In this document: positions 6,236 to 8,214 of the stretch, in pieces
How the letters are laid out: every line of letters starts with the position of its first letter
Position numbering within the stretch: position 1 is the first letter of the stretch
Source of the DNA: Blepharisma stoltei ATCC 30299
Taxonomy: Eukaryota; Protista; Ciliophora
Direction: 5' to 3'
Assembly (NCBI GenBank): GCA_965603825.1
Contig: CBFDEM010000020.1
Location: 434,001-498,000, forward strand
DNA length: 64,000 nt
Position numbers and translations under genes: made by a program
The notes under the pieces: generated by a model
What the model saw: the letters and a program-made list of their open reading frames with translations, nothing else
The model's database searches: none
Told to the model about the DNA's origin: nothing

Positions 6236-6844
6236 TTATTGAAGCCATGAATCGTCATCAAGTAATTCAAGCACATCTTGTTCAAATGTCCTTGGAGGAT
6301 TTCTCTTGTACTCCAAGGCTTTTCTGCAAATGGTTTCAAATATCCTTACAACGTTAGTTCCATCTGCAGCAGATACAAAAAAGAAATCCAAGCCATGAGT
6401 TTCTGCAAACTTAAAGCTTTTTTTAGTAACTTCTAAGTCCACATCAATCTTGTTTGCTAGCAATATGCAAGGAATGCTAGGACAAAACGTCCTCATTTCT
6501 TTATACCAAACTTTTAAATGGTCATATGTAATTTTTCTAGTAACGTCAAATACAAGAATTGCTGCATGTGCTCCAAAGTAGTATGAAGAATGCAGTCGGC
6601 TGAAACAATCTTGCCCTGCAGTGTCCCAGATATCAATTTTTGTAGGCTCTCCATCTATTTCAGTGTTATATCGAAACATCGTCAATGCAAATGTAGATAG
6701 CTGGCGCTCTTCGTAATCATCTATTAGGAATCGCTCGACAAGCTTGCTTTTACCGACAGCTGAGTCTCCTAAGAGGATGATTTTTATATCAGCGTTGGGC
6801 AGTTCAGCAGCTTCCTTGGCTTTTCGTTCAATTTCTGGATCCAT
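6236..6844 (-). CDS. RABL2: Rab-like GTPase 2 (ciliary, IFT-B associated)
   Basis: LLGDSAVGKSKLVERFL, RQLSTFALT (RABL2-type switch I), WDTAGQ, ANKID and SAADG; no C-terminal prenylation cysteines. Confidence 0.9.
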   Translation of the reverse strand: MDPEIERKAKEAAELPNADIKIILLGDSAVGKSKLVERFLIDDYEERQLSTFALTMFRYNTEIDGEPTKIDIWDTAGQDCFSRLHSSYYFGAHAAILVFDVTRKITYDHLKVWYKEMRTFCPSIPCILLANKIDVDLEVTKKSFKFAETHGLDFFFVSAADGTNVVRIFETICRKALEYKRNPPRTFEQDVLELLDDDSWLQ

Positions 6845-6904
6845 TTTTATGGAATTTTCGTTAAAAGTTTATTAAGAAGCTTAATTTTAAGAAAGATTAT
6901 TTGA

Positions 6905-7518
6905 TTAATCATGTCTTCTGGAGCCATTTGTACGGTTGTTCTGCATAATAAGTTACTCTTGGGTAGGGTGAGCCTGACCTTGATCTTCTTCTTGAATGGG
7001 ACCTTAAGGGTTAGTGTTTATTCTTTATTAGTTGTATATTTCATTACCTTGAAGACGAATATGATCTATCTCTTCTATATCTTGGAGGTGTCCGGCTGCA
7101 TAGCAAATACCTTCTAGATCTTCTTCTTGGTGATCGAGAGCGCCTGTATCTTCTTTCACGCCTTCTCATATCATCTGGCTAAAATTAAAGTTACTGCTTT
7201 TCGCTCTTCTCTTGCAAACACCACTTTTACTGTGGTTCCCAAGACCTCAGTACCATCAGTTTTTTCCAAAGCCTCTTTGGCTTCATTATAGTTGAGGAAT
7301 TCTACGAAGCCAAAACCTCGAGGCTTACGAGTGTAATAATCCTTTGGAATGTAAACATCGCGGATTTCGCCGAACTTGGAAAAGAATTCGCGAAGGTCGG
7401 TGTCTTTGATTTCTTCTGACTAATTGGAAATTACAAGCCCCCGGAGGAAGAGAGAAATTCGTTTAGGAGGAGTCTTTGAGCGCGGTCTCGGAGAGTTGTG
7501 GGGACTGCTGTCAGACAT
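6905..7518 (-). CDS. SR splicing factor (RRM + RS domain; SRSF10/SC35-like class), 5 predicted introns
   Basis: Missed by the ORF track. Spliced translation: MSDSSPHNSPRPRSKTPPKRISLFLRGL/SEEIKDTDLREFFSKFGEIRDVYIPKDYYTRKPRGFGFVEF...VVFAREERKA/PDDMRRRERRYRRSRSPRRRSR... Introns 7420-7434 (15 nt), 7179-7194 (16), 7096-7110 (15, CAG), 7003-7047 (45) and 6941-6956 (16, CAG). Confidence 0.88.
7003..7047 (-). other. Predicted 45-nt spliceosomal intron in the SR gene
   Basis: GTAATGAAATATACAACTAATAAAGAATAAACACTAACCCTTAAG. It contains two in-frame TAA codons, and removal joins RS sequence SYSSSR to SHSRRRSRSGSP. Confidence 0.7.
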
Positions 7519-8214
7519 AACTATTATAAATTATTTGGGCTTTCAATTAGATTTAATGATACGGCTGGTTATTATGCTTTCTTTCAGGCTTTTAACACTT
7601 TTTGAGTGGCCTTTCTTTATTCCTCTTTACTTTCAAAATAAGCTATTTAATGGTAAGTAATAAAGGAACACTTTGAAAGCCATACAAATTGTTTTGACTA
7701 GAGAGATAGAATATTAGCAGATAAATCAGTAGACGCTTTATGTATGATAAAAATAATTATTTAGTCCGGAAAAAAGTTATTCTTTTCCAGTAGGATGCAC
7801 GTACTTATAATTAGCTATTAGAATATATTTAAAAAATTATAGAAGGCTAATATAGCAAGTGATGCTTTTAGGATTCTTGAGAAATCGCTTGAGAGCAGCT
7901 CACTGAAAAATCAAAATTATTTCGGATTTTGTCAAATTATTATCACTCTAAAGAAGATAATTTAACGAAATTCCATAAAATGTATAAAAATATCCCAAAA
8001 CTATGACTTTATTTATTATAATTAATATAGAGATAATCAGGACTAAAAAATATTGATTTAAAAATATAATAAATTTCTAAAACAGAAAATTATTTCTAAA
8101 GCTAAATTAGTGTAGATTAAAATTAAATATTATCCTGCAGTTAGTTTTAAATATATTTCGTAAAAATCATTTATTTAATAATTTATAATTCAATTGCAGA
8201 TATTAAATAAAGAA

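What the first reader, a model, noticed from the sequence alone, without database searches (positions are those of the whole stretch)
7003..7047. A 45-nt, classical-looking intron with competing acceptors inside an SR splicing-factor gene: possible autoregulatory splicing switch in a 15-nt-intron genome
Seen: the RS domain is interrupted by GTAATGAAATATACAACTAATAAAGAATAAACACTAACCCTTAAG, three times the length of nearly every other intron here. It has two U2-complementary branch motifs, ACTAAT and ACTAAC, which the tiny introns lack. Three outcomes can be read. Splicing at the distal AAG (45 nt) gives in-frame ...SSSR-SHSRRRSRSGSP. Splicing at the proximal AAG (25 nt, 7023-7047, A at -6) frameshifts to RINTNP-stop. 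Retention gives an immediate TAA. Established: heterotrich introns are almost all 15-16 nt, and SR genes in animals and plants regulate themselves by unproductive splicing. Inference: this may be a retained long regulatory intron controlling RS-domain length or mRNA level, implying a second splicing mode in the heterotrich spliceosome.
Basis: partly seen in the sequence, partly recalled or inferred. Interest (0 to 1): 0.9.

Follow-up and report, generated by a model that had tools for sequence, protein, structure and literature searches.

The report
Conserved long intron in SR gene
In a ciliate whose introns are almost all 15-16 letters long, a splicing-factor gene keeps a real 45-letter intron; relatives as distant as Stentor have a long intron at the same spot, and some of their transcripts leave it unspliced, which points to an old splice-or-retain control like that of animal, plant and fungal splicing-factor genes.

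Summary
Window 7003-7047 (minus strand) is a genuine 45-nt GT-AG intron in the RS-coding part of an SC35-like/SRSF10-like SR gene. The genome fits the Blepharisma stoltei ATCC 30299 MAC assembly.

- **Splicing:** Transcript contigs remove exactly this stretch and four 15-16-nt introns, giving a 168-aa protein.
- **Annotation:** The public gene model stops at the TAA at the intron's 5' end (141 aa). It lacks this intron and the last two exons.
- **Conservation:** A 29-47-nt intron sits at the same codon in the B. stoltei paralogue, both Stentor coeruleus copies and six uncultured heterotrich-like contigs. This scan had already noted the paralogue's 47-nt intron on another contig (s1-646725). 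All other introns in these genes are 15-16 nt.
- **Core element:** An 18-nt core (purine-rich AAAGAAyA block plus CTAAC branch motif) is 16-17/18 identical between this gene and Stentor, although silent coding sites are saturated.
- **Retention:** Two relatives' transcriptomes hold forms that retain only this intron. One of them also holds the spliced form.

A regulated splice-or-retain switch is therefore likely but not shown for this gene. Feedback by the protein itself is untested.

The parts
7003..7047 (-). 45-nt GT-AG spliceosomal intron, phase 2, inside the RS-domain coding region
   Evidence: Sequence. Exact 45-nt skip in transcript contigs of X1 and X6, and the same junction in the X5 loose end.
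7044..7046 (-). TAA stop read in frame if the intron is retained. It is also the stop of the published gene model.
   Evidence..SSSR*. The NCBI model P0154 / L041 spans 475 nt from the ATG.
7010..7014 (-). CTAAC branch-site motif. The presumed branch A is at 7011, 9 nt from the intron's last base.
   Evidence: A CTAAC motif lies just upstream of the 3' splice site in 9 of 10 homologous introns; L042 has CTTAC. Lariat not mapped.
7015..7027 (-). Conserved purine-rich block (TAAAGAATAAACA) just upstream of CTAAC. It is complementary in register to U2 snRNA UCUGUUCUU and resembles SRSF10-type binding motifs.
   Evidence: The core is 16-17/18 identical to Stentor while 4-fold sites are 7/22. In-register pairing is 8/9. 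The U2 sequence comes from the same genome. The pattern is unique to the two SR paralogues in the genome.
7032..7041 (-). AAATATACAA, a 10-mer shared only with the B. stoltei paralogue's 47-nt intron; role unknown
   Evidence: (a shared 10-mer is reached by 21/2000 shuffles).
7023..7025 (-).
   Evidence: frameshift to RINTNP*; no such junction; part of the conserved purine block, not a conserved acceptor context.
7435..7518 (-). Exon 1 (ATG at 7518; short RS-like N-terminal extension)
7195..7419 (-). Exon 2, the RRM domain
   Evidence: Pfam RRM_1 E=1.1e-18; nearest solved single RRMs are Tra2-beta, SRSF2 and SRSF10.
7111..7178 (-). Exon 3 (start of the RS domain)
7048..7095 (-). Exon 4 (RS domain, ends ..SYSSSR with TCA AG|G)
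   Evidence: The exon end TTCAAG is conserved at nucleotide level in orthologues.
6957..7002 (-). Exon 5 (SHSRRRSRSGSPYPR); not in the published model
6905..6940 (-). Exon 6 (NNRTNGSRRHD plus TAA at 6907-6905); not in the published model
7420..7434 (-). Intron 1, 15 nt
   Evidence: Left out in contigs
7179..7194 (-). Intron 2, 16 nt
   Evidence: Left out in contigs
7096..7110 (-). Intron 3, 15 nt
   Evidence: Left out in contigs
6941..6956 (-).
   Evidence: Left out in the X1 contig

Best explanation
Window 7003-7047 (minus strand) is a genuine U2-type GT-AG intron of 45 nt in the RS-domain coding region of an SC35-like/SRSF10-like SR protein gene of Blepharisma stoltei. Shown: it is removed in the main assembled mRNA, giving a 168-aa protein. 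Shown: if it is kept, the frame stops at once (..SSSR-TAA), which is where the published gene model ends. Shown: a long intron (29-47 nt) sits at the same codon in the paralogue, in both Stentor coeruleus copies and in uncultured heterotrich-like organisms, while every other intron of these genes is 15-16 nt. Shown: seven of the ten share a core of a purine-rich AAGAAyA block, 4 nt, then CTAAC, with the 3' AG 7-8 nt further on, and this core is far better conserved than silent coding sites. Inferred: this intron is recognised through a strong base-paired branch site rather than through the fixed 5'ss-to-branch spacing of the tiny introns. Inferred: it has been kept long because it serves as a splice-or-retain switch. 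The spliced form gives the full-length SR protein. The retained form gives a message with an early stop and a long 3' UTR that still holds a spliced intron, and so is probably unstable or encodes a tail-less protein. This would be the ciliate counterpart of the unproductive splicing that controls SR genes in animals, fungi and plants. Whether the SR protein itself, or U2 snRNP availability, sets the choice through the purine-rich block is open.
For: - Splicing: an exact 45-nt skip together with the four tiny introns in a zero-mismatch transcript contig, and the same junction in two related organisms.
- Frames.
- Homologous long introns at the same codon: 47 nt in L002, 42 nt in L025, 43 nt in Stentor L026 and L028, 42 nt in L029 and L030, 29 nt in L036, 43 nt in L043 and 35 nt in L042. 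They are aligned.
- Constraint: the 18-nt core is 16-17/18 identical between this gene and Stentor while 4-fold sites are 7/22. Between the paralogues the figures are 12/18 and 6/20. The introns of the two paralogues align better than all but 14 of 2000 shuffles.
- Specificity: the core pattern occurs in the 41-Mb genome only in the two SR paralogues, against 7 hits for the reversed control pattern.
- The downstream exon stays open and RS-rich in nine of ten homologous copies.
- Retention isoforms: the tail of B. japonicum MMETSP1395 peptide P0151 is the translation through the retained 47-nt intron, and P0049 stops at ..SSSR. In another heterotrich transcriptome, Transcript_2405 (P0160, 154 aa) stops at the intron boundary and Transcript_2406 (P0267, 184 aa) equals the spliced product of L042. 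The tiny introns 2 and 3 (and in P0160 also intron 1) are spliced in these retained forms.
- The X2 contig ends exactly at the exon 4/intron boundary, as expected at a branch in the assembly graph.
- Context: 97% of B. stoltei introns are 15-16 nt and splicing frequency falls with intron length (PMC9942806 SI). SR genes are controlled by unproductive splicing, and the retained fungal SRSF5 intron is likewise unusually long (PMC4379411; PMC7726792).
Against: - No retained or alternatively spliced form of this particular gene was seen in B. stoltei.
- The database holds no transcript-derived 141-aa product.
- Conservation of the core could reflect only what a long intron needs to be spliced at all in this spliceosome.
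- One orthologue (L043) lacks the purine block and another (L042) lacks CTAAC.
- Retained forms in Trinity or MMETSP assemblies can be unprocessed pre-mRNA. In B. japonicum the in-frame 15-nt intron 1 is retained too.
- NMD and feedback are untested.
- The tail removed by retention is only 13-30 residues, so the truncated protein may still work.
Confidence: 0.55

Rival explanations
1. It is a constitutive relic intron with no regulatory role. It is simply an ancestral intron that escaped miniaturisation. Its CTAAC and purine block are conserved only because a long intron cannot use the spacing-based recognition of tiny introns and needs a strong U2-paired branch site. The retained forms in transcriptomes are ordinary unspliced precursor.
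For: - The only form seen for this gene in three organisms is fully spliced.
- Splicing efficiency falls with intron length in Blepharisma (PMC9942806 SI), so a strong branch site would be needed.
- The purine block pairs 8/9 in register with U2.
- The B. japonicum transcript also retains a tiny in-frame intron.
Against: - It does not explain why this one site stayed long in every lineage sampled, across a Stentor/Blepharisma split dated by PMC13685798 at about 400 My. Heterotrichs kept only about 1% of ancestral introns and shrank the rest (PMC13685798).
- Intermediate lengths of 29 and 35 nt exist, so shrinking is possible.
- Retained and spliced forms are assembled side by side, with the tiny introns removed.
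Confidence: 0.33
2. The proximal AAG (25-nt intron, branch ACTAAT) and the distal AAG (45 nt, branch ACTAAC) compete, and the proximal choice frameshifts to a premature stop.
For: The sequence allows it: A at -6 of the proximal AAG and the frameshift to RINTNP*. The (A/T)AAG lies in a conserved block.
Against: - No contig in four runs shows a 25-nt skip.
- ACTAAT is not conserved: the paralogue has no A at -6.
- In Stentor the proximal site would give an in-frame 7-residue insertion instead of a frameshift.
- The conserved AAG is better explained as part of the AAGAAyA block.
Confidence: 0.05
3. There is no intron. The gene ends at TAA 7046-7044 as in the public annotation, and the sequence downstream is 3' UTR.
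For: The public models of B. stoltei (P0154) and S. coeruleus (P0152) both end at ..SSSR.
Against: Transcript contigs skip exactly the 45 nt. The downstream frame is open, RS-rich and conserved in nine of ten homologous copies. P0267 proves the spliced product in a relative.
Confidence: 0.01
4. It is a DNA-level deletion (an IES-like excision between the AAGGT direct repeats that flank the segment) rather than RNA splicing.
For: Five letters fit on either side of the joint (column 'both').
Against: - The segment is present in the MAC assembly and in DNA contigs of every relative, with GT..AG ends and a branch motif.
- It is absent from contigs that also lack the tiny introns, so those contigs are RNA.
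- The repeat is simply the exon AG|GT consensus on both sides.
Confidence: 0.01

Closest known systems
Unproductive splicing (alternative splicing coupled to decay) of SR genes, especially the retained long intron of fungal SRSF5/srp2 (Lareau and Brenner 2015, PMC4379411)
   Same: It is an SR gene. One particular intron is retained and brings an in-frame stop. The intron position is conserved over very long times, and the intron is unusually long for its genome, having 'resisted the pressure toward shorter introns'.
   Different: The SR subfamily differs (single-RRM SC35-like/SRSF10-like, not SRSF5). The organism is a ciliate. The scale is extreme (45 against 15 nt). Here the intron core sequence is conserved, whereas the fungal intron sequence is not. 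NMD sensitivity and feedback are untested here.
SRSF10 autoregulation and plant SCL33 decay-inducing splicing (PMC8522700, PMC7244321, PMC7726792)
   Same: These are the closest named protein relatives (plant SCL30A/SCL33, SRSF10), and both are known to produce non-productive isoforms. The SRSF10 RRM binds AAAGACAAA or AGAGAV, which resembles the conserved AAAGAACA block.
   Different: SRSF10 uses competing 5' splice sites and a minor-spliceosome intron, and Blepharisma has no minor spliceosome. No binding data exist for the ciliate protein.
Ordinary heterotrich tiny introns (15-16 nt, branch A at position 10, i.e. -6)
   Same: GTAA 5' end, AAG/TAG 3' end, the same spliceosome, and a stop codon on retention in phase 2.
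   Different: It is three times as long. The 5'ss-to-branch distance is 36 nt instead of 9. The branch A is at -9 instead of -6. It has a full CTAAC motif that the four tiny introns of this gene lack.
Yeast-type branch site UACUAAC paired to U2 GUAGUA
   Same: The CTAAC (TACTAAC in L025 and L043) is conserved, and the U2 of this genome has the identical GUAGUAUCUGUUCUU.
   Different: The possible extra 7-bp pairing of the upstream block with U2 UGUUCUU is separated from the branch helix by two mismatches and is only weakly better than chance.

Membership tests
U2-type GT-AG spliceosomal intron | GT at the 5' end and AG at the 3' end on the coding strand | tested here: met
   the joint ends read CT..AC on the + strand.
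U2-type GT-AG spliceosomal intron | Absent from mature RNA while present in DNA, with the reading frame restored | tested here: met
   The X1 contig has 0 mismatches and skips 45 nt plus four tiny introns. The frame continues as RS domain.
U2-type GT-AG spliceosomal intron | Branch-point adenosine used for lariat formation | not testable with these tools
   A CTAAC motif is present and conserved. No lariat reads are available.
Heterotrich tiny intron class (15-16 nt) | Length 15-16 nt with the branch A about 10 nt from the donor | tested here: not met
   The length is 45 nt and the presumed branch A is at intron position 37. Class definition from the PMC9942806 SI.
SR protein, SC35-like/SRSF10-like single-RRM subfamily | N-terminal RRM | tested here: met
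   Pfam RRM_1 E=1.1e-18 on exon 2.
SR protein, SC35-like/SRSF10-like single-RRM subfamily | C-terminal domain rich in Arg-Ser dipeptides | tested here: met
   Translation of exons 3-6..RRSRSPRRRSRSRTPPRYRRDRSYSSSRSHSRRRSRSGSP..
SR protein, SC35-like/SRSF10-like single-RRM subfamily | Closest named relatives belong to that subfamily | tested here: met
   The named hits are plant SCL30A/SCL33/SCL28, SRSF10 and 'FUS-interacting SR protein 1', and NCBI names the gene SCL25A. By PDB sequence search it lies close to Tra2-beta, SRSF2 and SRSF10. No phylogeny was made.
Autoregulated unproductive splicing of an SR gene | An alternative isoform with a premature stop made from the same intron | tested here: inconclusive
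   Shown for the paralogue in B. japonicum (P0049, P0151) and for an orthologue in another heterotrich (P0160 against P0267). Not seen for this gene in B. stoltei.
Autoregulated unproductive splicing of an SR gene | Conserved non-coding element in the regulated intron | tested here: met
   The 18-nt core is 16-17/18 identical to Stentor while 4-fold sites are 7/22.
Autoregulated unproductive splicing of an SR gene | The unproductive isoform is degraded by NMD | not testable with these tools
   Needs UPF1 depletion or a translation block.
Autoregulated unproductive splicing of an SR gene | The protein binds its own pre-mRNA and shifts the isoform ratio | not testable with these tools
   There is only a motif resemblance to SRSF10 sites.

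The most novel reading that the evidence does not exclude
Heterotrich ciliates have kept one conventional intron in their SC35-like SR genes since before the Stentor/Blepharisma split. This intron is read by U2 base pairing (CTAAC plus a helper helix between the AAGAAyA block and U2 UGUUCUU) and not by the spacing ruler used for 15-nt introns. The SR protein or U2 snRNP level acts on that block to choose between the productive mRNA and a retained-intron decay target. That would mean two recognition modes in one spliceosome, and an SR feedback loop that predates the divergence of these ciliates.
Probability: 0.22. Interest if true: 0.82.

Novelty: new variant of a known kind. Interest (0 to 1): 0.66.

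Why it matters
- **Gene models:** Two published heterotrich gene models, B. stoltei 'SCL25A' and S. coeruleus SteCoe_21851, stop at this intron and lack their last exon or exons. This work corrects them.
- **Capacity of the spliceosome:** The tiny-intron spliceosome of heterotrichs still handles a classical intron with a yeast-like branch site. That gives a natural pair of substrates, 15 nt and 45 nt in one transcript, for asking how the branch site is chosen when there is no room for U2 pairing.
- **Reach of SR-gene control:** The pattern 'SR genes keep one unusually long, retainable intron' would extend from animals, fungi and plants to ciliates. This bears on whether unproductive splicing of splicing factors is ancestral to eukaryotes or keeps re-evolving. 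In a genome with 0.29 introns per gene, a 0.6-kb gene with five introns, one of them under sequence constraint, is a compact system to test that.

Tried and rejected
1. **Shared 10-mer as a class motif.** A genome search for the Blepharisma-specific start of the intron (GTAAT, 1-2 nt, AAATATACAA) gave the two SR paralogues plus two unrelated places (a TPR gene and a stretch that is not an SR gene), against one control hit. It is not a class motif.
2. **U2 duplex energies.** Energies of whole introns against U2 nt 29-56 were only weakly better than shuffles (14 to 132 of 500 shuffles as good; for L036 424 of 500). The extended U2 pairing therefore rests on the in-register count alone.
3. **Conserved hairpin.** RNAalifold on eight orthologous introns with flanks found no conserved hairpin (-0.1 kcal/mol), so the idea that a hairpin shortens the intron is rejected.
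5. **Other RS-containing RRM genes.** L003, L004, L005 and L013 showed no comparable long intron on inspection. A GT..AG candidate in L013 is in-frame coding.
6. **Missing records.** P0049 has no contig on record. P0162's sample file was too large to give DNA. P0154 is on record only on the genome assemblies, not on any transcript contig.
7. **Unresolved transcripts.** P0276 and P0277 (MMETSP, 146 aa) end in ..SRSR. Without their DNA I could not tell which intron, if any, stops them.
8. **Joined model not searched.** Searches used exon 2 by reference or protein ids returned by the tools. Joined translations were computed only locally.

Full report
**What is there.** The finding lies on the minus strand.
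- Reading 7518 down to 6905 gives a small gene: ATG at 7518, a 28-residue Ser/Pro/Arg-rich start, one RRM (exon 2, 7419-7195; Pfam RRM_1 E=1.1e-18) and an Arg/Ser-rich tail.
- The gene is interrupted by GT..AG stretches of 15, 16, 15, 45 and 16 nt.
The 45-nt removal is in frame, the 25-nt removal ends in RINTNP-stop, and retention ends in ..SSSR-TAA.
The real C-terminus is ..GSPYPR|NNRTNGSRRHD, with the stop at 6907-6905.

**Which genome.**
- The assembly has 41.46 Mb in 64 contigs.
- The public record of this locus is B. stoltei CAJZBQ010000020.1.
- UGA codes for Trp in this species.
- This fits the Blepharisma stoltei ATCC 30299 somatic genome (PMC9942806).

**Is the intron real?** Yes.
- The runs that hold this stretch behave as RNA, because their contigs lack the tiny introns.
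- A 601-nt contig of X1 has no mismatch and covers 6885-7592. It lacks 6941-6956, 7096-7110, 7179-7194 and 7420-7434, and it carries a joint that skips 45 nt with ends CT..AC on the + strand.
- A contig of a related organism (X6, about 92% identical) has the same joint.
- A contig of a third organism (X5) ends 14 nt past the joint, with letters that equal 6987-7000.
- The spliced 168-aa form is therefore the assembled mRNA in three organisms.
- No contig shows the 25-nt form or the retained form of this gene. Contigs drop rare variants, however, and the X2 contig stops exactly at the exon 4/intron border, which is what a branch in the assembly graph would give.

**The public annotation misses it.**
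- The NCBI protein of this locus ('SCL25A', P0154) ends at ..SSSR, and its gene spans 475 nt from the ATG to the TAA at 7046-7044.
- The annotation pipeline calls an intron only from reads with a single gap. It needs at least 10 such reads and a spliced fraction of at least 0.2 (SI).
- Here the flanking exons are 48 and 46 nt, so most reads that cross this intron also cross a neighbouring one. The miss may therefore be technical and says little about retention.
- S. coeruleus SteCoe_21851 (P0152) also ends at ..SSSR.

**Relatives.** I searched with exon 2 by reference and then with protein ids returned by the tools.
- The closest paralogue in the same genome (L002 on contig 46; RRM 67% identical) has the same exon plan. 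Its introns are 15, 15 and 15 nt, followed by a 47-nt intron at the homologous codon (TCA AG|G after ..SSSR).
- DNA of further relatives shows the same arrangement (aligned):

| Source | Locus | Long intron |
|---|---|---|
| Stentor coeruleus MPUH01000525 | L028 | 43 nt |
| Stentor coeruleus MPUH01001483 | L026 | 43 nt |
| Metagenome scaffolds | L025, L029, L030 | 42 nt each |
| Metagenome scaffold | L043 | 43 nt |
| Logan contig | L042 | 35 nt |
| Logan contig (GC-rich) | L036 | 29 nt |

- In every one of these genes the other introns are 15 nt (15-16 nt in the window gene).
- The exon behind the long intron stays open and Arg/Ser-rich in nine of the ten copies, for example SHSRRYSSSSDSR in Stentor. 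The exception is the apparently broken Stentor copy SteCoe_35300.

**Sequence constraint.**
- Seven of the ten introns share a core: (T/A)AAGAAyAmAnACTAAC, followed after 7-8 nt by the 3' AG of AAG or TAG.
- Between this gene and the Stentor copies the 18-nt core is 16-17/18 identical. Four-fold degenerate sites in identical codons of the RRM exon agree at 7/22 and 7/20, which is saturation.
- Between the two B. stoltei paralogues the core is 12/18 against 6/20 at silent sites. Their whole introns align better than all but 14 of 2000 shuffles.
- In the whole 41-Mb genome the pattern GTAA, 10-40 nt, AAGARYANANNCTAAC occurs only in these two genes, against 7 hits for the reversed control.
- L043 keeps TACTAAC but not the purine block. 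L042 has CTTAC instead of CTAAC.

**What the core may do.** There are two readings and I could not separate them.
- *Reading (a): extended U2 pairing.*
  - The U2 snRNA of this genome reads GUAGUAUCUGUUCUU, as in human.
  - With CTAAC set on GUAGUA, the block upstream pairs in register with UCUGUUCUU at 8 of 9 places in all seven introns.
  - Other CTAAC sites average 4.3 of 10, and 4% reach 8.
  - The three substitutions seen in the block (C to U, A to G, and A to G in B. japonicum) all keep a wobble pair.
  - However, two mismatches separate this helix from the branch helix, and duplex energies are only weakly better than shuffles.
- *Reading (b): a protein-binding site.*
  - The block is purine-rich and resembles the sites of the nearest animal relative. 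The SRSF10 RRM binds AAAGACAAA or AGAGAV (PMC8522700).
  - A to G changes fit that reading as well.
- No conserved hairpin exists.

**Retention.**
- The B. japonicum transcriptome (MMETSP1395) holds peptide P0151. Its tail ..QVQGNSNIQVFESTF is the translation, in a shifted frame, straight through the retained 47-nt intron of the paralogue, as far as the TAA inside CTAAC.
- P0049 from an MMETSP transcriptome (the source name is cut in the record) matches P0151 exactly over 79% of its length, and its ORF stops at ..SSSR. In both peptides introns 2 and 3 are spliced.
- In another heterotrich transcriptome two neighbouring transcripts were assembled. Transcript_2405 (P0160, 154 aa) stops at the intron border. 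Transcript_2406 (P0267, 184 aa) is exactly the spliced product predicted from L042.
- The long intron is therefore left in some assembled transcripts in which tiny introns are removed, in two lineages.
- This is not proof of regulation, because such contigs can be precursor RNA.

**Interpretation.**
- The intron is real and ancient. PMC13685798 dates the Stentor/Blepharisma split to about 400 My and reports that heterotrichs kept about 1% of ancestral ciliate introns.
- This intron has stayed long, under sequence constraint, at one site of one SR gene family, while all its neighbours are 15-16 nt.
- Lengths of 29 and 35 nt in two lineages show that shortening is possible, so a pure 'cannot shrink' argument is weak.
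- The best fit is a splice-or-retain switch of the kind that controls SR genes elsewhere. The closest parallel is the retained SRSF5/srp2 intron of fungi, which is also among the longest introns of its genomes (PMC4379411).
- I put this at about 0.55.
- The main rival, at about 0.33, is a constitutive relic whose core is conserved only to make a long intron spliceable.
- The competing-acceptor version has no support.
- Feedback by the protein itself, NMD sensitivity and the branch nucleotide are untested.

**Novelty.**
- Neither the B. stoltei genome paper nor the 2026 ciliate intron survey mentions a conserved long intron in SR genes, and a literature search found no paper that does.
- The Stentor study attributed introns that were not 15 or 16 nt to mis-assembly (quoted).
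- I class the finding as a new variant of a known kind: unproductive or retained-intron control of SR genes, here in a tiny-intron ciliate and with a conserved branch-site core.

Noticed in passing
window 6905-7518 (-): The gene has five introns in 614 nt, in a genome with 0.29 introns per gene. The positions of introns 1-3 are shared with the paralogue, Stentor and most metagenome orthologues, so this SR gene family is an island of retained ancestral introns.
   Followed up: partly
window 6300-6848 (-): A Ras/Arf-type small GTPase gene starts at about 6845, only about 60 nt downstream of the corrected SR stop codon (6905). With the published stop at 7044 the gap would be about 200 nt.
   Followed up: no
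L026:1500-2010 (Stentor coeruleus MPUH01001483, SteCoe_35300): This Stentor copy keeps the 43-nt intron and its core, but its RS-coding exons are out of frame (the annotated protein reads ..PHEETDLDIDHQ..) and the tail has in-frame stops. It is either a decaying duplicate or an assembly indel.
   Followed up: partly
L002 (G000:C46:783249-786458, minus strand): In B. japonicum transcripts (P0049, P0151) the in-frame 15-nt intron 1 of the paralogue is read through as VIFTQ. Tiny 3n introns without stops can thus persist in assembled mRNA.
   Followed up: no
window 7032-7041 (-) and L002 intron: AAATATACAA is shared by the two B. stoltei paralogue introns although silent sites between them are saturated. 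It is absent from the Stentor-type introns, and no function was found.
   Followed up: partly
alignment A1, columns 1-12 (exon end before the long intron): The exon end TTCAAGTTCAAG (Ser-Ser-Ser-Arg) is conserved at nucleotide level, silent positions included, across Stentor, the paralogue and the metagenome contigs. TTCAAG recurs at the intron's 3' end in several of them. This may be an exonic splicing signal.
   Followed up: no
L037:1501-1690 and L038:1501-1690: There are two U2 snRNA genes in the genome (160 and 127 bits). They differ in stem I and in 3' parts but are identical from the branch-site recognition sequence to stem IIa.
   Followed up: no
L029:1431-1440: A run of N inside intron 3 of the metagenome scaffold orthologue; the length of that intron is unknown.
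   Followed up: no
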